Shown in pieces: positions 83 to 18,045 of a DNA stretch of 18,412 nt (within the stretch, counting starts at the first letter, position 1; every line of letters begins with the position of its first letter). This DNA comes from Octopus sinensis (Eukaryota): the NCBI RefSeq assembly GCF_006345805.1, contig NW_021824504.1, positions 1 through 18,412 on the forward strand. Direction: 5' to 3'. A program made the translations under genes and the position numbers. A model generated the notes under the pieces. The model saw only the letters and a program-made list of their open reading frames with translations, searched no databases and was not told the origin of the DNA.

Positions 83-351
83 TATTATCTTATAATGCAT
101 AGTGTATGTTGTAAAAATATCTGTTACAGATCTTATAACGGTGTGAAAATTACTGAAGACCGTTGCTAATAGTTCTGTTAGATCAGGTGAAATCGAGTAG
201 ACTAAAGCTTCAACCACATATGACGCCAGACCAACGGAGCCTCTACACGTCACTCAATATGCCAGAAACAACGGCCAAAATTTCCACAAATTCTACTATA
301 TCGTCTTTAAGAACCAAGTAGCGTGAAATTAATTATTTCTAGACACATAGA

Positions 352-682
352 CGCGGGCGTGGCTGTGTGGAAAGAGGTTTACTTCCCAACCACATGGCTT
401 CGGGTTCAGCCCCACAGCATGGCACCTTTCGCGAATGTCTTCTGCAATACGGACCAAAGTTCTGAGTGGATTTGTTAGACGGAAACTGAAAGAAGCATGT
501 CGCACGCTTGACAACTGGTGTTGACTTGCTCATCTCCCCGTAACTTAGCGGTTCGGCAATAAGTATCGATAGAATAAGTACAAAACTTTAAAAAGAAAAA
601 CAAGTACCAGAGTCGATTGTTCGACTAAACCCATCAAGGCGGTGGTCCCAGCATAGGCGCAGTCCAGACTGAAACAGATAAA
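352..682 (+). mobile_element. tRNA-derived SINE (octopus-type, GGCGTGGCTGTGTGG head), near full length, internal microsatellite linker absent
   Basis: Head GGCGTGGCTGTGTGG...CTTCCCAACCACATGG.TTCGGGTTCAG (B-box-like GGTTCA), body GACGGAAACTGAAAGAAGC, 3' part GTAACTTAGCGGTTCGGC...GTCGATTGTTCGAC...CCAGCAT...GACTGAAAC. Homologous to copies at 2889-3188, 9551-9716 and 13337-13697. Confidence 0.9.
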
Positions 683-1531: not shown

Positions 1532-2167
1532 GTGGTGGTTGTGGTTGGAGCGAGCGATGTGTATGTGTGTGTGTGTGTAGTGGTGGACGTCGTATGGTGA
1601 ACGCTGTTGGGTTAGTATACACTCTCTCTCACCCTCTGTCTATCTCTCTATCTTTCTATCTATCTGTCTGTCTGTCTGTCTGCAGATGAACTTTGGAACT
1701 TCGAGAGATGTGAAATAATTCTTTTTTGGAACGGTGAAACTAGAAATATATAAAGCTATAAATAATGGAATATAAATATTGGGTTAAAAATACATTTGGA
1801 CAGAAAAAGTCAAAGGATTTGTGTGTGTATGTGTGTGTATTTATAAATATATATATATAAATACACACACACACACACACAATCCTTTGACTTTTCTGTC
1901 CAAATGTATTTTAACCCAATATTATATTCCATTTTATAGCTTTATATATTTCTAGTTTCACCGTTCCAAAAAAGAATTATTTCACATCTCTCGAAGTTCC
2001 AAAGTTCATCTGCAGACAGACAGACAGACAGATAGAAAGACAGAGAGATAGACAGAGGGTGAGAGAGAGAGTAAGAGATATTACTAACCCAACAGCGCTC
2101 ACCATACGACGTCCACCACTACACACACCCACACACACATACACATCGCTCCAACCACAACCACCAC
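1532..2167. repeat. Large near-perfect palindrome (arms ~1532-1845 and ~1856-2167, TA-rich ~10-nt spacer)
   Basis: For example CTGCAGATGAACTTTGGAACTTCGAGAGATGTGAAATAATTCTTTTTTGGAACGGTGAAACTAGAAATATATAAAGC in the left arm has its exact reverse complement in the right arm. Complementarity continues out to GTGGTGGTTGTGGTTGGAG / CTCCAACCACAACCACCAC. Confidence 0.95.
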
Positions 2168-2890: not shown

Positions 2891-3187
2891 ACTCTTAATC
2901 TTTACTCTTTTACGCTTTTACTTGTTTCAGTCATTTGACTGCGGCCATGCTGGAGCACCGCCTTTAGTCGATCAAATCGACCCCGGGACTTCTTGTAAGC
3001 TCAGTACTTATTCTATCGGTCTCTTTTGACGAACCGCTAAGTGACGGGGACGTAAACACACCAGCATCGGTTGTCAAGCAATGCTAGGTGGACAAACGCA
3101 GACACACAAACACACACACTCATATATATATATATATACATATATACGACAGGCCTCCTTCAGCTTCCGTCTACTAAATCCACTCAC

Positions 3188-3188
<1 letters not shown>
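2889..3188 (-). mobile_element. SINE copy (same family as 352-682), 5'-truncated
   Basis: Reverse complement of the 3' body: TTTTACTTGTTTCAGTCATTTGACTGCGGCCATGCTGGAGCACCGCC...GAACCGCTAAGT.ACGGGGACGTAAACACACCAGCATCGGTTGTCAAGC...TTCCGTCTACTAAATCCACTCACA. Confidence 0.9.
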
Positions 3189-3189
<1 letters not shown>

Positions 3190-4674: not shown

Positions 4675-5376
4675 CCTCCCCACCACCGCCATCTCCCCAC
4701 CGCCATCACCACCGCCACCACTACTACTACTACACCATTGATACCACTTCTGTGGTATTCATAGAACTACCACCAGGATACCATCTCTACCGCCTCCACC
4801 ACCACCAACACTGCCACCTCCTCTCCAACCTTATAGCCGTGCAGACATGCTGCTTGTTACCCGTCAAGGGGCTGGCTGGAGATTTATACAAGAATTTATT
4901 TAAAACCCCAAATTGCTTGCCACTGATGATGATGGAGACGACGAGGTGGAGGAGGAGGAAATGATGAGGATGATGCTCATTATGATGATGATGATGAAGA
5001 CAACGACTATAATGATGATGCTGACGACGACAACGATAATGATGAAGTTGATGATGCTGATGCTGATGATGATGATGGTGATGATGATGATGATGATGAT
5101 GATGATGAGGGATGAAAGAGTGATGTGATGGCAGGGAAACATTCAGATAATTCTACTGATAACGATGTGGGAGTTGATAAAGCCAACAACGGCAATGGTG
5201 ATGATGATGACGATAATGATGATGATGGTGGTGGTGGTGGTGGTGGTGGTGGTAGTGGTGGTGGTGGTGATGATGTTAATGTTGATGATGTTGATGATGA
5301 TGATAATGACGACGATGATGATGATATAATAATGCGCGAGCAGACATCACGCATGTCTCCGCATACGTGTTCGTCA

Positions 5377-5808: not shown

Positions 5809-5868
5809 GTAAGAACATTTGATTGAGTACAAAAGTCCGAGCAATGTGAGAAGATTCATAGTCGTTTA

Positions 5869-6354
5869 TGCAAATACTCCAAGGACACAGATATTGTCTA
5901 AAGCCAGCTAGAGACGAAGATCTCTTGGGGCTATAAAGCTACAGTAACACCCCCTCCCCAATGTGGTTAGCCATGATAAGATGGCTCCTATACTTTACAT
6001 TATCGAGCGATTACTGTTTCAATCTCATTCTGAGATTTAATTATGCTTACTGTTCGTTTTTCGACATCAGTGGCAGACGCCATTAGAAAAACATATATAT
6101 TTGCAAAGAGGCCTTCACTTTCATCGCTACCTGGTGGTTACCGCCCGTTGACGAGGGACAACAATCCCGAAACTAGTTCGAGCGTATCACTCAGGCTTGC
6201 GAGGAAGGGATGGCCTCCCTTTGCAAGTACTCCAGGACACCGATATTGTGTCTAAAGCCAGCTAGAGACGAAGATCTCTTGGGGCTATAAAGCTACAGTA
6301 ACACCCCCTCCCCAATGTGGTTAGCCATGATAAGATGGCTCCTATACTTTACAT
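5869..6354 (+). mobile_element. Partial-tandem element: 353-bp unit plus repeated first 132 bp, carrying a hammerhead ribozyme (retrozyme / Penelope pseudo-LTR-like)
   Basis: Direct repeats 5869-6000 and 6222-6354 are identical from TCTAAAGCC to TTTACAT (about 105 bp), with a few differences at the 5' end. The hammerhead lies in the intervening 221 bp. No ORF and no target-site duplication (TSD) seen. Confidence 0.65.
6101..6226 (+). ncRNA. Type I minimal hammerhead ribozyme motif with long extended stem I (probably partly decayed)
   Basis: Core TTGACGA (6148-6154; consensus CTGANGA), stem II GGGA/TCCC with CAACAA loop (6155-6168), GAAA (6169-6172), palindromic stem III ACTAGT (6172-6177), NUH triplet GTT (6176-6178). 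Stem I strands 6101-6147 and 6179-6226 pair as an imperfect ~45-bp helix. Confidence 0.8.
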
Positions 6355-6380
6355 AATTTTTAATCCTTTTTGGAATAGTA

Positions 6381-6633
6381 TTGGGTTGGTCCATAATTAT
6401 TGCGGCCTTTTTTATTCAACAAATTTTATTCAACAAAAACAATAACAATATTTAACAAAATCATCTTTAAATGACGGTCTGACCGTCTGCCAAGGAAATG
6501 GGAACCAGTAATTGAAGTAGATGGTGAATATGCTTCGGAATAATCATTTAAAGATGTTTTTGTTACATTTTATTGTTTTTGTTGAAAAAAAAAATTGTTG
6601 AAAAAAAGCCGCAATAATTATGCACCAACCCAA
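6381..6633 (+). mobile_element. Mariner-family MITE / internally deleted mariner with TA target-site duplication
   Basis: TA|TTGGGTTGGTCCATAATTATTGCGGC ... GCCGCAATAATTATGCACCAACCCAA|TA. The terminal inverted repeat (TIR) resembles Hsmar1/MADE1 TTAGGTTGGTGCAAAAGTAATTGCGG, and imperfect inverted arms extend ~90 bp. Confidence 0.92.
6481..6543 (+). pseudogene. Mariner transposase C-terminal remnant DRLPRKWEPVIEVDGEYASE*
   Basis: Matches the conserved mariner C-terminal pattern L..RW..VI...G.Y and lies between the two TIR arms. Confidence 0.85.
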
Positions 6634-6863
6634 TAGCTCTCAAAGTAATCAGAGTAGCATGTAAATATTGGATTCGGTATTCACTGTTCCAAAAAAGAAT
6701 TATTTCGCGTTCTTCTGGCGTCGATAATTTTTAATTAATACAAATTTCAGAGTTAACCCCACTATTTTTTTTTTTTTTTTTTTTACCTCACTAGCTCACT
6801 GTACTAACGATTATTTCACCGAACCATTAGTTTCATTAAAACATTATTTTTTCCGTCTCACAG

Positions 6864-9550: not shown

Positions 9551-9716
9551 GGGAGAGAAACACATACACACATAGGACTTTCAGTTTCTGTGTACCAAAT
9601 CCACTCGACCCGAAGCTATAGTAGAAAACTCTTGCTCAAGGTGCCACGCAGTGGGACTGAACCCTGAATCATGTGGTTGGTAAGCAAGCTGCTTACCACA
9701 CAGCTACTCCTGTGTC
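9551..9716 (-). mobile_element. SINE 5' portion (352-type)
   Basis: GTGCCACGCAGTGGGACTGAACCC.GAATCATGTGGTTGGTAAGCAAGCTGCTTACCACACAGCTACTCCTG is the reverse complement of the family head. Confidence 0.9.
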
Positions 9717-9811
9717 TATATATATACACACATACATAAATATATATGTGAATAATATAATATATAATCATGCATATATGCATACCTATATATATGGGTG
9801 TATATATATGG

Positions 9812-10409: not shown

Positions 10410-10634
10410 ATAACGCATGTCTTTGTGTTTGTGCTCCTTCATCCTAGGGCAACCATGTTGAATTGTTTAGATCGCCGTAACTTAGCGATTCAACAAAAGA
10501 CACCGATAGATTATGTACCAGACTTTAAAAACAAATACGTGCTAGGTTCGATTTTGGGACTAAATCCTTCAAGGCGGTGCTCCAGCATGACAGCAGTCCA
10601 ATCACTGAAACAAGTAAAAAGATAAAAGAATAAA
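10410..10634 (+). mobile_element. SINE 3' portion (352-type)
   Basis: CCGTAACTTAGCGATTC..CAAAAGACACCGATAGA...AAGGCGGTGCTCCAGCATG.CAGCAGTC...CTGAAACAAGTAAAAAGATAAAAGAATAAA. Confidence 0.85.
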
Positions 10635-12215: not shown

Positions 12216-12339
12216 AGAAAAGGGTTTAAAAAACCCTCAAATGAAACACTATACTATTATTAAACTAAAAAAGTTTATTGATAAAATGGCTGTAAAAAAA
12301 TAAAATAACAAAATGAAAAACGCGATATATACATAATTT

Positions 12340-12700
12340 AATTTTTTCTCTTCCTCGTTCTCCATTTTGTTCATGAGATGCATGTTGACCTTCATGAAAA
12401 TTAGTATGTCAAAATTCTCATCGGACAGGGATGAACTCTTGGCCTTCAAGATGTCCTCGCTCACAGAGAACAAACTCTCCACTGCAGCATTGGAAGGGAA
12501 TGGCTGTGTTGGACTTGATGAACAAGTCCACCAACACTTGTTCACCCAAGAAGGTAGCATCTGGCAGCAAGTCCTAGAAGTTGGTCTCCAACCAGGTCTT
12601 CACCAAATTCTGGGCCTTGTCCTTGAGTGACCTGTGGCCCTGCTGCTCTCTTTTGGCTGGATGACAAAAGTCCTCCTCCCATAAATAACCTTGCCTGGAC
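12340..12700 (-). pseudogene. hAT transposase C-terminal fragment including the dimerisation domain
   Basis: Reconstructed HRSLKDKAQNLVKTWLETNF*DLLPDATFLGEQVLVDLFIKSNTAIP/SNAAVESLFSVSEDILKAKSSSLSDENFDILIFMKVN. Matches the hAT motif P.S...ER.FS.......R..LS...F..L.F.K.N. In-frame TAG at 12574-12576 and a +1 frameshift near 12495. Confidence 0.88.
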
Positions 12701-12912: not shown

Positions 12913-13336
12913 GTGTAGAATCTTCCTCGTTAAATTGTTAATTAGTATCACCACTGATATCATTGTTATTTAGCGTCAGGTTAACCCTGATCCAGTAGAC
13001 CTATGATCAAATACTTTCTAGCCGTGACCATATCACCATATTCTCCAGCATGCAAAGGACCTCATTGTCACAATATTCAATACGTTATTTTGTAAGAAAG
13101 TAAATTGAGAATCGAAGGAGATTTATGGAACATAAAAAAGAGAGCTTGCAGTACAGAATTTGAACCCACGAACTTCACCTATGCAGGTGCTACCCAGAAT
13201 GGTCAAACTGAAGGAATTAAGGGTCAAAGTGAATTTTTGAAGGGATAAAATTGTGCAGAATAATTGTGGGAAGACTGAGGTTTCCGGGGAATAGCGTTTC
13301 TGGAATGGAGCGGTCGAGTAAAATGTTTAAGTATAA

Positions 13337-13478
13337 GGCGCAGGAGTGGCTGTGTGGTAAGAAGTTTGCTTCCCAACCACATGGTTCCGGGTTCAATCCC
13401 ACTGCGTAAGTGTCTTCTACTATAGCCTCTGACTGACCAAAGCGAATTTGGCAGACGGAAGCTGAAAGAAGCCCGTCG

Positions 13479-13535
<57 letters not shown>

Positions 13536-13697
13536 ATATGTATTTGTGTGTTTGTTTGTCAGCTCCACCATCGTTTGACAACCGATATTGGTGTGCTTAC
13601 GTCCTTGAAAGTTAGCGGTTCAGTTAAAAAAAACGATAGAATAATTCCTGGGGTCGATTTGTTCGACTAAAGGCGGTGCTCCAGCATGGAGTCAAAT
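13337..13697 (+). mobile_element. SINE (352-type) with internal (TA)n(TG)n linker, 3' end truncated
   Basis: GGCGCAGGAGTGGCTGTGTGGTAAGAAGTTTGCTTCCCAACCACATGGTTCCGGGTTCAATCCCACTGCG ... AGGCGGTGCTCCAGCATGG.AGTCAAAT. Confidence 0.92.
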
Positions 13698-15269: not shown

Positions 15270-15974
15270 GTGTATGGATGACCAGGGATAGTGTGAGGAG
15301 TGGTGCAGGGGTGGGAGAAAGTGAGGTGGACAGGAGGGAAGAGGGTATGTATGCGCGCGTGTGTATGAACCAAGGGCAATCTAGGAAGATAGAGAGAGAG
15401 GAGGAATGGGGAGAGGGTGTGGAGAAAGAGAGAGTGGAGAGAGAGAGGATAGAGAGAGAGACGGTGGATAGAGTGAAGGTGGAGAGAGAGTGGAGTGAGC
15501 AAGAGTAGAGAGAGAGGGTGGAGAGGGGGTGGAGAGAGAGTGGAGAGAGAGAGAGAGAGAGAGTGTGTGTGTGGAAACAGAGAGGGTGGAAAGAGAAAGT
15601 GGAGAGAGAGGAGGGAAGAGGGAGAAAGATGAACAGACAGACGTGGAGAGAGAGAGAGAGACAGAGAGACAGAGACAGAGAGAGACAGAGGCGGGTGTCT
15701 GAGTATGTGCGTATAAATGGGCCTTGTGTTATAGAGAAAGAAAGAGATGTGGTAACAGGAGGAAGAGATGGCGGAGAGAGGAAGGGAGAGAAGAGGAAAA
15801 GAGAGAGGAAGAGAAAGGTGAGGAAGGGAGAGAGGAGGAGAGGGAGATGGAGGGACGGACAGACAGGCAAACAGGTAGAGGTCTGTATTAAATATTGGGT
15901 GTGTATGTGTGCGTGTGTGTGTATGCGTGTAGGAATAGGTAGTGTGTTTGGAGATAATAACCAGAAAGACAGAC

Positions 15975-16012
<38 letters not shown>

Positions 16013-16044
16013 TTGGGTGGGTAGATAGATAGATAGATAGATAG

Positions 16045-16087
<43 letters not shown>

Positions 16088-16230
16088 GGATAGATAAATA
16101 TATAGATAGACAGATAGAGAGAGAGGGGGGACTGGGGGAGAGAGATTGAGCGAGAGAGGAAGAGACAGGAAGAGAGGAGAGGGGGAGTTAGGAGGAGAGA
16201 ATGAGAGATGCACACACAGGTCGGTAGAAA
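15270..16230. repeat. Strand-asymmetric purine-rich tract: GTGGAGAGAGAG-like minisatellite, (GA)n, (GATA)n
   Basis: Nearly pure G/A on + over long stretches; source of the spurious 330/315-aa Leu/Ser ORFs. Confidence 0.9.
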
Positions 16231-17844: not shown

Positions 17845-18045
17845 GTGTCGTTGTGTCCATGTTTGTCCCCACCACCGTTTGACAACTGATGTTGGTGTGT
17901 TTACGTCCCCGTAACTTAGCAGTTCGACAAAAGATACTGATAGAATACGTACAAGGCTTAAAAAAGAAGTACTGATTGCGATTCATTCGACTAAAAATTC
18001 AAGACAGTGCCCCAACATGGCCACAGTCTAATGACTATAAAAAGA
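17845..18045 (+). mobile_element. SINE 3' portion (352-type)
   Basis: TTTGACAACTGATGTTGGTGTGTTTACGTCCCCGTAACTTAGCAGTTCG.CAAAAGATACTGATAGAATA...CATGGCCACAGTCTAATGACT. Confidence 0.88.

What the first reader, a model, noticed from the sequence alone, without database searches (positions are those of the whole stretch)
6101..6226. Type I minimal hammerhead ribozyme with palindromic stem III capping a ~126-nt rod
Seen: core T-T-G-A-C-G-A (6148-6154), a 4-bp stem II GGGA/TCCC, GAAA, self-complementary ACTAGT and triplet GTT, predicting a cut after 6178. Stem I pairs G6147-C6179, C6146-G6180, C6144-G6182, G6143-C6183, C6142-G6184 and continues imperfectly out to TTGCAAAG (6101) / CTTTGCAA (6226), about 45 bp. 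Established: minimal type I hammerheads with a palindromic stem III that fold as dimers are characteristic of Penelope-like elements, newt satellite 2 and metazoan non-LTR retrozymes. Inference: this is a slightly decayed copy. U at position 3 (normally C3, pairing with G8), U at 17 (GUC is most common) and one C-A mismatch in stem I are each a single transition from a canonical motif.
Basis: partly seen in the sequence, partly recalled or inferred. Interest (0 to 1): 0.88.

Follow-up and report, generated by a model that had tools for sequence, protein, structure and literature searches.

The report
Hammerhead ribozyme in a retrozyme-like repeat
The motif is a real relic of a self-cutting RNA (a hammerhead ribozyme) carried by a small 354-base mobile repeat of a kind already known in animals, and this copy is probably crippled by one base change, so it is a sound but ordinary find.

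Summary
A type I hammerhead lies at 6130-6200 (+), with its predicted cut after U6178, at the tip of a 44-bp rod spanning 6101-6226. It is not a chance match. Rfam HH9 gives 31.2 bits (E 2e-4 for the whole window), although this is below the gathering score of 52. My relaxed descriptor found this one site and none in 2000 shuffled windows.

The hammerhead sits in a 354-nt unit present as 1.38 head-to-tail copies (about 5869-6357). The overlap includes a 106-nt identical run, and there is only one ribozyme. The unit is non-coding, 45.5% GC and highly self-paired. This matches animal non-LTR retrozymes, which are thought to derive from Penelope-like elements.

The word "minimal" is wrong. Helix I has 6 bp plus an internal loop, helix II has 4 bp, and helix III is 1-2 bp with a palindromic loop. 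That is the canonical metazoan design (newt, axolotl, HH9), which works as a dimer.

U3 breaks the C3-G8 core pair, so this lone copy is probably inactive. U17 is an allowed residue. The near-identical repeats suggest a young insertion, so the three deviations are unlikely all to be later decay. No relatives could be retrieved, so the family consensus and the source organism remain untested.

The parts
5869..6000 (+). 5'-truncated partial unit (the left direct repeat, playing the role of a pseudo-LTR). It corresponds to the last ~135 nt of the 354-nt unit and contains no ribozyme. The left edge is uncertain within 5865-5870.
   Evidence: blastn matches 5869-6003 to 6222-6357 at 95.6% over 137 nt. 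MAFFT alignment. A 106-nt identical run, 5895-6000 = 6249-6354, lies at offset 354.
6001..6354 (+). Full 354-nt unit of the repeat. It is non-coding, 45.5% GC and highly self-paired. The right edge is uncertain within 6354-6357.
   Evidence: Repeat offset of 354. The linear fold has z -4.65. The circular fold is -105.3 kcal/mol with 65% of bases paired, and GC is 0.455. The only sizeable ORF (70-73 aa) has no Pfam match and no homologues.
6101..6226 (+). Rod: an extended helix I of 37 bp with the hammerhead core at its tip.
6130..6200 (+). Type I hammerhead ribozyme motif (full-length alignment to Rfam Hammerhead_HH9).
   Evidence: 31.2 bits, model positions 1-77 of 77. Descriptor hit.
6133..6141 (+). 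Distal helix I 5' strand GGUGG (6133-6137), pairing with UCACU 6187-6191, followed by the 5' side UUAC of the internal loop ('loop 1', 6138-6141).
   Evidence: Alignment to the HH9 consensus gGCCgUUAC.
6142..6147 (+). Proximal helix I, 5' strand CGCCCG. C6145 is mismatched with A6181.
6148..6154 (+). Core strand 1, U3 U4 G5 A6 C7 G8 A9. The consensus is C3. U3 replaces the C3-G8 Watson-Crick pair with a U-G combination.
   Evidence: Sequence. Consensus and the C3-G8 pair from PMC7151607, PMC3088659 and PMC11167929.
6155..6168 (+). Helix II, GGGA/UCCC (4 bp, G10.1-C11.1 present), with the 6-nt loop 2 CAACAA.
6169..6171 (+). Core strand 2, G12 A13 A14.
6172..6177 (+). Helix III/loop 3, the palindrome ACUAGU (A15.1...U16.1). 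It cannot form a hairpin in a monomer. It can form a 6-bp intermolecular helix in a dimer. With U17 the palindrome lengthens to the 8-nt AACUAGUU.
   Evidence: Cofolding two copies gives -45.4 kcal/mol against 2 x -20.0, with the intermolecular helix on this palindrome. Rfam aligns it as helix III with its loop deleted.
6178..6179 (+). U17 and C1.1. The predicted scissile bond lies between 6178 and 6179.
   Evidence: Position follows from the hammerhead numbering applied. No cleavage was tested.
6179..6191 (+). Helix I 3' strand: CGAGCG (6179-6184), internal loop UA (6185-6186), and distal UCACU (6187-6191).
6222..6354 (+). Right direct repeat, which is the 3' part of the full unit duplicated at 5869-6000. 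It includes a small hairpin at 6235-6253 that is one base pair shorter in the left copy (5883-5899).

Best explanation
The locus 5869-6357 is one insertion of a small non-coding retroelement of the animal non-LTR retrozyme kind. These are hammerhead-bearing repeats now thought to be non-autonomous derivatives of Penelope-like elements (PLEs).

Proposed life cycle of the family, inferred from the literature rather than shown here:
1. Tandem source copies are transcribed into multimeric RNA.
2. The type I hammerheads of neighbouring units pair through their palindromic loop 3 (ACUAGU). This builds the missing helix III as a double hammerhead.
3. Each ribozyme cuts after position 17, releasing 354-nt monomers with 5'-OH and 2',3'-cyclic phosphate ends.
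4. A tRNA ligase (RtcB type) closes the monomers into rod-like circles.
5. A PLE-type reverse transcriptase copies a circle or a multimer into DNA. This yields insertions longer than one unit with arbitrary end points.

The copy in the window fits this outcome. It is a full 354-nt unit preceded by a 5'-truncated 135-nt piece of the same unit, 1.38 units in all.

This copy is probably not a working ribozyme. It has only one hammerhead, so it has no partner in cis. U3 also replaces the C3 that pairs with G8 in the catalytic core. It is best read as a dead or nearly dead daughter copy. The repeats are nearly identical, so some or all of its deviations were probably already in the template RNA.
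For: Shown here:
- The hammerhead motif is real and non-random.
- It has the canonical metazoan type I design. Its internal loop and loop 2 align to HH9. Its geometry matches the description in PMC4209133.
- Helix III can form only between two molecules.
- The host is a 354-nt unit present as 1.38 head-to-tail copies.
- The unit is 45.5% GC, 65% paired as a circle and significantly structured, with z -4.65.
- The unit shows no coding signal: its only sizeable ORF has no Pfam hit and no homologues. The window has no substantial non-repetitive ORF and no YxDD or GIY-YIG motif.
- The downstream flank is AT-rich at 78%.

From the literature:
- Non-LTR retrozymes are 150-450 bp tandem units with type I hammerheads and GC below 50%. 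They lack LTR, PBS and PPT. They occur as anything from dimers to long arrays, and their RNAs are highly self-paired circles. Mussel units are 350-390 bp (PMC7229834).
- The axolotl HHR_Amex1 has a 1-bp helix III with a palindromic tetraloop plus conserved loop 1/2 contacts, and cleaves well only as a dimer.
- PLEs and their non-autonomous relatives insert as partial tandems, a full copy preceded by a 5'-truncated copy, at AT-rich sites (PMC8557442; PMC11167929).
- Retrozymes are related to PLE pseudo-LTRs, and monomeric derivatives are common (preprint 10.64898/2026.07.22.740005).
Against: - No second copy of the unit or of the ribozyme could be retrieved from anywhere. Multi-copy status, a family consensus and covariation are therefore untested.
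- The Rfam score of 31.2 bits is below the gathering score of 52.
- The locus has only 1.38 units and one hammerhead, whereas published retrozymes are defined by tandem hammerheads.
- No PLE reading frame lies in the 18.4-kb window.
- No target-site duplication was found.
- The [A][B][A] layout alone cannot separate a partial tandem from short LTR-like repeats.
- Transcription, cleavage and circles were not and could not be tested.
Confidence: 0.72

Rival explanations
1. The element is a very small LTR-type element. Two ~135-bp direct repeats beginning TG and ending CA would flank a 218-nt internal region made mostly of the hammerhead rod. It would be a miniature animal counterpart of plant LTR retrozymes or TRIM elements.
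For: The layout is [repeat][internal][repeat]. The repeat starts TG (5869-5870) and ends ACA (5997-5999). A purine-rich run GAGGAAGGGAUGG (6201-6213) lies just upstream of the right repeat, where a polypurine tract would sit.
Against: In plant LTR retrozymes the hammerheads lie inside the LTRs, so that two cuts release the RNA (PMC4918200 abstract). Here the single hammerhead is in the internal part. No TGG-type primer-binding site follows the left repeat. No 4-6 bp target duplication was found. Animal hammerhead repeats are reported to lack LTR, PBS and PPT. The purine run is simply the 3' arm of the rod.
Confidence: 0.07
2. The locus is a fragment of satellite-type tandem DNA. It would have been produced by DNA-level events (unequal crossing-over, replication slippage or segmental duplication) rather than by reverse transcription of a circular or multimeric RNA. 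The hammerhead would be a passenger relic.
For: Hammerhead repeats were first described as satellites (newt satellite 2; cave-cricket pDo500, PMC2837043). The 2026 preprint discusses local amplification of retrozyme units by unequal crossover. No target duplication was seen.
Against: The locus is an isolated 1.38-mer in an 18-kb window with no other trace of the unit. That looks like a dispersed insertion rather than the edge of an array. The mechanism cannot be settled from one locus, and this reading overlaps with the best explanation as to what the sequence is.
Confidence: 0.12
3. The motif is an exapted, functional cis-acting hammerhead that processes a host transcript, as HH9 and HH10 do in amniote introns.
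For: The best Rfam match is HH9, an intronic ribozyme family.
Against: The core carries U3. Helix III is not stable in a monomer. The motif lies inside a duplicated repeat unit. No gene or exon was recognisable in the window. The score is 21 bits below the HH9 threshold.
Confidence: 0.04
4. The hammerhead-like motif is a chance occurrence on an ordinary hairpin.
For: The match is below the Rfam gathering score. One invariant core position, C3, is not met.
Against: E is 2.1e-4 for the whole window on both strands. My descriptor found 0 hits in 2000 shuffles. Loop 1 and loop 2 also agree with HH9. The hosting repeat has the size, GC content and self-pairing of known hammerhead repeats.
Confidence: 0.03

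Closest known systems
Animal non-LTR retrozymes (Cervera and de la Pena 2020, PMC7229834), for example the Mytilus galloprovincialis 350-390 bp units and the Acropora 220-240 bp units
   Same: A type I hammerhead sits in a non-coding unit of a few hundred bp arranged head to tail. GC is below 50%. There is no LTR, PBS or PPT. The RNA is highly self-paired. The 354-nt unit length falls in the mussel range.
   Different: Only 1.38 units and one hammerhead are present here, against dimers to 62-mers. The core has U3. Copy number, expression and circular RNA are unknown for this element. The mussel ribozymes are reported to lack most of the archetypal loop 1/loop 2 nucleotides, whereas this one aligns with the HH9 loops.
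Amphibian satellite 2 / axolotl HHR_Amex1 hammerhead (330-nt repeat)
   Same: Helix III is reduced to a single A-U pair closed by a palindromic tetraloop (here A-CUAG-U). The loop 1/loop 2 architecture is conserved. Efficient cleavage is expected only as a dimer. The unit length is similar.
   Different: The amphibian motifs keep C3. The source here is presumably a different animal group (organism not identified), and no sequence homology outside the ribozyme was tested. Amphibian arrays reach very high copy numbers.
Rfam Hammerhead_HH9 (RF02275), the intronic type I hammerheads of amniotes
   Same: It is the best-scoring model, with a full-length alignment. Helix I has 6 bp, followed by the internal loop UUAC / UA(C) and a 5-bp distal helix. 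Helix II has 4 bp with a 6-nt A-rich loop.
   Different: The score is 31.2 bits against a gathering score of 52. HH9 has a stable helix III with a loop, which is deleted here. HH9 is single-copy and conserved in introns, not carried by a repeat.
Minimal hammerheads in the pseudo-LTRs of Penelope-like elements (Cervera and de la Pena 2014, PMC4209133)
   Same: Both are type I, have a palindromic 15.2-16.2 / loop 3 region, are expected to act as dimers, and are associated with partial-tandem insertions.
   Different: PLE min-HHRs have a 7-8 bp helix II, a 4-5 bp helix I, an extra unpaired base before helix II, and no loop 1/loop 2 contacts. None of these applies here. No reverse transcriptase or GIY-YIG reading frame is nearby.
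Plant LTR retrozymes (PMC4918200)
   Same: They are non-autonomous retroelements whose RNA is cut by hammerheads and circularised.
   Different: Plant elements carry type III hammerheads inside ~350-bp LTRs, have a PBS and PPT, have GC above 55%, and produce 600-1000 nt RNAs.
Schistosoma Sm-alpha hammerhead repeat (recalled from my own knowledge, not checked here)
   Same: It is a ~335-bp dispersed and tandem repeat with a canonical type I hammerhead whose helix I bulge contacts loop 2.
   Different: Sm-alpha is described as SINE-like with a Pol III promoter and an active consensus core. Neither feature was tested here.

Membership tests
Hammerhead ribozyme, type I | Conserved core C3 U4 G5 A6 N7 G8 A9 ... 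G12 A13 A14, the A15.1-U16.1 pair, and H17 (not G) | tested here: not met
   All core positions match except position 3, which is U instead of C (UUGACGA at 6148-6154). U17 is allowed. U3 with G8 loses the Watson-Crick C3-G8 pair. Natural covariants are U3-A8, not U3-G8.
Hammerhead ribozyme, type I | Three helices around the core, with the open ends in helix I | tested here: met
   Helix I is 6 bp with one mismatch plus a 5-bp distal part. Helix II is 4 bp. Helix III is only a 1-2 bp palindrome that can form as a 6-bp helix in a dimer. The strand order is helix I 5' strand, helix II hairpin, helix III, cleavage site, helix I 3' strand, which is type I.
Hammerhead ribozyme, type I | Score at or above the curated Rfam threshold for a hammerhead family | tested here: not met
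   31.2 bits against 52 for RF02275. There is no hit in gathering mode.
Hammerhead ribozyme, type I | Mg2+-dependent self-cleavage after position 17 | not testable with these tools
   This needs in vitro transcription and cleavage assays.
Canonical metazoan type I hammerhead (as opposed to the PLE minimal hammerhead) | Helix I of 6 bp, helix II of 4 bp, conserved loop 1/loop 2 nucleotides, and helix III of 1-2 bp with a 2-4 nt palindromic loop (PMC4209133) | tested here: met
   The geometry was read. The internal loop UUAC/UA and loop CAACAA align to HH9's UUAC/UAC and CAAAAA. Helix III is A-CUAG-U.
PLE minimal hammerhead | Helix II of 7-8 bp, helix I of 4-5 bp, an unpaired base between positions 9 and 10.1, no helix III, and a location in the pseudo-LTR of an element with an RT/GIY-YIG ORF | tested here: not met
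   Helix II is 4 bp and helix I is 6 bp plus an extension, with no extra base after A9. No YxDD or GIY-YIG motif occurs in any frame of the window.
Non-LTR retrozyme | Head-to-tail repeats of a 150-450 bp unit, each carrying a type I hammerhead (dimer or longer) | tested here: inconclusive
   The unit is 354 nt and arranged head to tail, but only 1.38 units and one hammerhead are present.
Non-LTR retrozyme | Low GC (below 50%), non-coding, and without LTR, PBS or PPT | tested here: met
   GC is 45.5%. The ORF has no Pfam match and no homologues. No TGG primer site follows the left repeat. The purine run at 6201-6213 is the rod's 3' arm.
Non-LTR retrozyme | Highly self-paired unit-length RNA | tested here: met
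   z is -4.65 for the linear unit. The circular fold is -105.3 kcal/mol with 65% of bases paired.
Non-LTR retrozyme | Many copies in the genome, co-occurrence with PLEs, and expression as linear and circular RNA | not testable with these tools
   No collection of animal genomes or transcriptomes was available. All indirect routes returned nothing.
Rfam Hammerhead_HH9 | Conserved single-copy intronic ribozyme with a stable helix III | tested here: not met
   The helix III loop is deleted in the alignment, the score is below threshold, and the motif lies in a duplicated repeat unit.

The most novel reading that the evidence does not exclude
U3, U17 and the helix I mismatch may not be decay. They may have been present in the RNA that was copied into this young insertion, given the 106-nt identical overlap. 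In that case either (a) this family uses a natural U3-G8 wobble core that still cleaves, perhaps only in a dimer with a second unit, or (b) hammerhead cleavage is dispensable for mobilising these elements in vivo. The second reading would match the in vitro finding for an Anolis PLE (PMC11167929).
Probability: 0.15. Interest if true: 0.55.

Novelty: new member of a known kind. Interest (0 to 1): 0.28.

Why it matters
Type I hammerheads in short repeats are already known across animals. Several hundred Hammerhead_1 hits have been reported in a cephalopod genome (PMC6962438). One more degenerate copy therefore does not change the picture.

The locus has two modest points of value. First, it is a clean example of a retrozyme-type unit inserted as a partial tandem, which is the layout typical of Penelope-like elements. 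That agrees with the recent proposal that animal retrozymes are non-autonomous PLE derivatives, a proposal so far examined mainly in vertebrates. Second, the near-identity of its two overlapping copies offers an internal clock. Combined with a family consensus, that clock could show whether ribozyme-defective RNAs are still mobilised.

Tried and rejected
1. Rfam at gathering thresholds found nothing. The hammerhead appears only in E-value mode.

2. I looked for relatives by DNA pattern.
- The 21-mer core (GAGGGACAACAATCCCGAAAC) in metagenome contigs gave one hit. It was a chance 22-nt identity inside a bacterial gene on CEUK01102219.1, read in frame as protein-coding. About one such hit was my own rough expectation by chance.
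- The same core or a longer core pattern in bacterial/archaeal genome contigs and in viral contigs gave no hits.
- A 26-mer from the identical repeat segment gave no hits in either collection.
- The MITE terminal repeat in viral contigs gave no hits.

3. I looked for relatives through spurious ORFs.
- The 70-aa ORF across the ribozyme had no homologues in the word-indexed protein search.
- Its exact product is not on record.
- The exhaustive HMMER search gave one hit at E 1.7e-4, an unrelated 5-fold repeat protein matching outside the ribozyme part.

4. The ORF at 12249-12560 (-) looked to me like a hAT transposase C-terminus. It has no homologues and no Pfam match, so I dropped the idea.

5. 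The third homologue search was not spent. The only remaining queries were old SINE-like translations (74-84% DNA identity between copies). At best they would have yielded random samples of the genome, with a very small chance of containing the element.

6. No target-site duplication was found. Only a non-adjacent 5-mer is shared between the flanks.

7. No paralogous empty site for the insertion exists in the window.

8. No RT (YxDD) or GIY-YIG motif occurs in any frame of the window.

9. The supplement of PMC7229834 contains no cephalopod retrozyme to compare with.

Full report
OBSERVATION

On the + strand:
- Helix I, 5' strand: CGCCCG at 6142-6147.
- Core strand 1: UUGACGA at 6148-6154.
- Helix II: GGGA 6155-6158 with UCCC 6165-6168, closed by the loop CAACAA.
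- Core strand 2: GAA at 6169-6171.
- Helix III/loop 3: the palindrome ACUAGU at 6172-6177.
- Position 17: U6178.
- Helix I, 3' strand: CGAGCG at 6179-6184.

The segment 6101-6226 folds into a rod of -52.5 kcal/mol. Its z-score is -4.67, and none of 200 shuffles folds as well. The fold has 44 pairs, 37 of them on the helix I axis.

IS IT CHANCE?

No.
- Rfam at curated thresholds reports nothing in the window.
- In E-value mode, the Hammerhead_HH9 model aligns over its whole length to 6130-6200 at 31.2 bits. E is 1.7e-5 in a 1.5-kb search and 2.1e-4 for the whole window on both strands.
- It is the only ribozyme hit in the window. The many other hits are microRNA-type models landing on microsatellites and inverted repeats.
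- A deliberately relaxed descriptor of my own accepted C or U at position 3 and one mismatch in helix I. It finds this one site and none in 2000 dinucleotide-preserving shuffles of the window on both strands.

The motif is therefore real, although it is 21 bits short of the family threshold.

WHAT KIND OF HAMMERHEAD?

The Rfam alignment shows more than the core.
- The 6-bp helix I is followed by an internal loop (UUAC on the 5' side, UA on the 3' side) and a 5-bp distal helix (GGUGG/UCACU).
- Helix II is 4 bp with a 6-nt A-rich loop.
- These features match HH9's UUAC/UAC and CAAAAA almost base for base.

Cervera and de la Pena (PMC4209133) define this as the canonical metazoan type I design. 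It has a 6-bp helix I and a 4-bp helix II that interact through conserved loop nucleotides. Its helix III is 1-2 bp, capped by a 2-4 nt palindromic loop, which prevents efficient cleavage in a monomer and allows an active dimer.

Their minimal hammerheads of Penelope-like elements (PLEs) are different. Those have a 7-8 bp helix II, a 4-5 bp helix I, an extra unpaired base, and no helix III.

The closest published architecture is the axolotl/newt HHR_Amex1 type. It has a single-pair helix III closed by a palindromic tetraloop, conserved loop contacts, a 330-nt repeat, and poor activity as a monomer but good activity as a dimer (PMC7229834).

Cofolding two copies of 6130-6200 does produce the intermolecular helix on the palindrome, at -45.4 kcal/mol against -40.0 for two monomers. 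With U17 the palindrome is 8 nt (AACUAGUU). In a dimer that could also tie up A14 and U17, which the active core needs unpaired. This last point is my inference.

The ribozyme lies in a repeat.
- Segment 5869-6003 matches 6222-6357 at 95.6% over 137 nt.
- The offset is exactly 354, and 106 consecutive bases are identical (5895-6000 = 6249-6354).
- The locus is therefore a full 354-nt unit (about 6001-6354) preceded by a 5'-truncated copy of its last ~135 nt. That makes 1.38 units head to tail, with the single hammerhead in the non-duplicated part.
- The left end of the insertion (5865-5870) corresponds to 6220-6223, the outermost pairs of the rod's 3' arm. This could mean that cDNA synthesis stopped when it met the rod a second time, but that is speculation.

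Properties of the unit:
- GC is 45.5%.
- The fold is strongly structured: z -4.65 as a linear RNA, and -105.3 kcal/mol with 65% of bases paired as a circle.
- Its only sizeable ORF has no Pfam match and no homologues.
- No other trace of the unit exists in the 18.4-kb window.
- No RT or GIY-YIG motif occurs in any reading frame of the window.
- No target-site duplication was found. The downstream flank is 78% A+T.

WHAT IT IS

These properties fit the animal non-LTR retrozymes. Those are type I hammerheads in 150-450 bp head-to-tail units with GC below 50%, no LTR, PBS or PPT, and highly self-paired RNAs that accumulate as circles. Mussel units are 350-390 bp (PMC7229834).

The layout of a full copy preceded by a 5'-truncated copy is the partial-tandem signature of PLEs and their non-autonomous relatives, which insert at AT-rich sites (PMC8557442; PMC11167929). 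[quoted passage not shown]

I therefore read 5869-6357 as one dispersed insertion of such an element.

HOW IT WORKS

The steps below are inferred from those papers, not shown here.
1. Source arrays are transcribed into multimers.
2. Hammerheads of adjacent units pair through ACUAGU and cut after position 17.
3. The 354-nt monomers are circularised by a tRNA ligase.
4. A PLE-type reverse transcriptase copies a circle or multimer. This gives insertions longer than one unit with end points unrelated to the cleavage site.

Here neither end of the insertion coincides with 6178/6179, which fits that last point.

IS THIS COPY ACTIVE, AND IS IT DECAYED?

C3 pairs with G8 in the active site. Single changes at these positions abolish cleavage and swapped pairs restore it. 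Natural covariants are U3-A8. Core mutations in general cause a drastic loss of activity.

U3 opposite G8 is therefore expected to cripple the ribozyme. In addition, the locus offers no second hammerhead in cis. U17 is a permitted residue, and a single C/A mismatch in a 37-bp helix I is minor.

The claim of decay can be partly tested internally.
- The two overlapping copies differ by two substitutions and two indels. All four fall in the first ~30 of 137 aligned columns, and the remaining 106 nt are identical.
- At that divergence (~3% pairwise), about 0.6 changes are expected in the 43-nt ribozyme since insertion. P(>=1) is 0.47, P(>=2) is 0.13 and P(>=3) is 0.03.
- One post-insertion hit, possibly C3 to U, is plausible. 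All three deviations being decay is unlikely, so some were probably already in the template RNA or are native to the family.
- The four clustered differences fall in and beside a small hairpin. It has 6 bp in the right copy and 5 bp in the left, with the same loop length. This hints at a variable but structured region, or at errors made at the end of cDNA synthesis.

SEARCH FOR RELATIVES

The decisive test is a family consensus with covariation. It could not be run, because no collection of animal genomes was available.
- DNA pattern scans of metagenomic, prokaryotic and viral contigs gave only one chance hit, inside a bacterial gene.
- Protein-space routes using the ORF across the ribozyme gave nothing relevant.
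- The literature held here does not describe cephalopod retrozymes. It does report 235 Hammerhead_1 loci in the giant squid genome (PMC6962438).

VERDICT

The finding is a genuine hammerhead relic in a retrozyme-type 354-nt repeat. It is a new member of a known kind, and this copy is most likely catalytically dead.

The main open alternative about the element's nature is a tiny LTR-like element. The repeats begin TG and end CA, and a purine run precedes the right repeat. Against it, the hammerhead lies outside the repeats, there is no primer-binding site, and there is no target duplication.

The most novel reading not excluded is that a U3-G8 core was already present in the mobilised RNA. That would imply either a tolerated wobble core or hammerhead-independent mobilisation.

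Noticed in passing
window 6381-6635: A 255-bp hairpin element lies 24 bp downstream of the retrozyme-like insertion. Its ~27-nt terminal inverted repeats are TTGGGTTGGTCCATAATTATTGCGGCC and GGCCGCAATAATTATGCACCAACCCAA, and it is flanked by TA on both sides. It looks like a mariner/Tc1-type MITE; the resemblance of the repeat to mariner-derived MITE ends is from my own memory. Rfam mis-scores it as MIR8007 at 38 bits against a threshold of 195. The DNA fold has z -13.5.
   Followed up: partly
window 1532-2167: A large near-perfect inverted repeat has arms 1624-1762 and 1933-2071 (139 nt, 93% complementary), with an outer pair 1532-1682 / 2017-2167. It surrounds a TG/TA-rich centre at 1806-1894 that draws many sub-threshold microRNA-model hits on both strands. 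It is probably a foldback element or MITE.
   Followed up: no
window 347-597; also 3004-3189(-), 9578-9719(-), 10456-10553, 13336-13644, 17876-17968: An old dispersed repeat family (71-85% identity between copies) occurs in both orientations. It is often followed by (TG)n/(TA)n microsatellites and looks SINE-like. ARAGORN finds no tRNA-like head in the window.
   Followed up: partly
window 4935-5340: A long imperfect (GAT)n/(GGT)n triplet tract would encode Asp/Gly-rich low-complexity peptide on the + strand. The GC skew here is strongly positive. There is no evidence that it is an exon.
   Followed up: no
window 15400-16200: An 800-bp purine-rich strand-asymmetric region of (GA)n, GAGAGG-type and (AGAT)n repeats has GC skew up to +0.7. 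It generates the window's longest, meaningless ORFs on the opposite strand.
   Followed up: no
window 12249-12560 (-): A 103-aa ORF has a central part (AAVESLFSVSEDILKAKSSSLSDENFDILIFMKVN) that looked to me like the C-terminal dimerisation region of hAT transposases. It has no Pfam match and no homologues, so the resemblance is unconfirmed.
   Followed up: yes
L001 958-979 (-), contig CEUK01102219.1: A 22-nt exact identity to the hammerhead's helix II region (window 6153-6174) lies inside a bacterial protein-coding gene. It is a chance match, and a reminder that short core patterns alone give false positives in very large collections.
   Followed up: yes
window 5883-5899 versus 6235-6253: A small hairpin in the duplicated part of the unit differs between the two copies by one substitution and a 2-nt indel, yet it remains a hairpin with a 7-nt loop (5 bp against 6 bp). 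All four differences between the copies cluster in and just upstream of it, while the next 106 nt are identical.
   Followed up: partly
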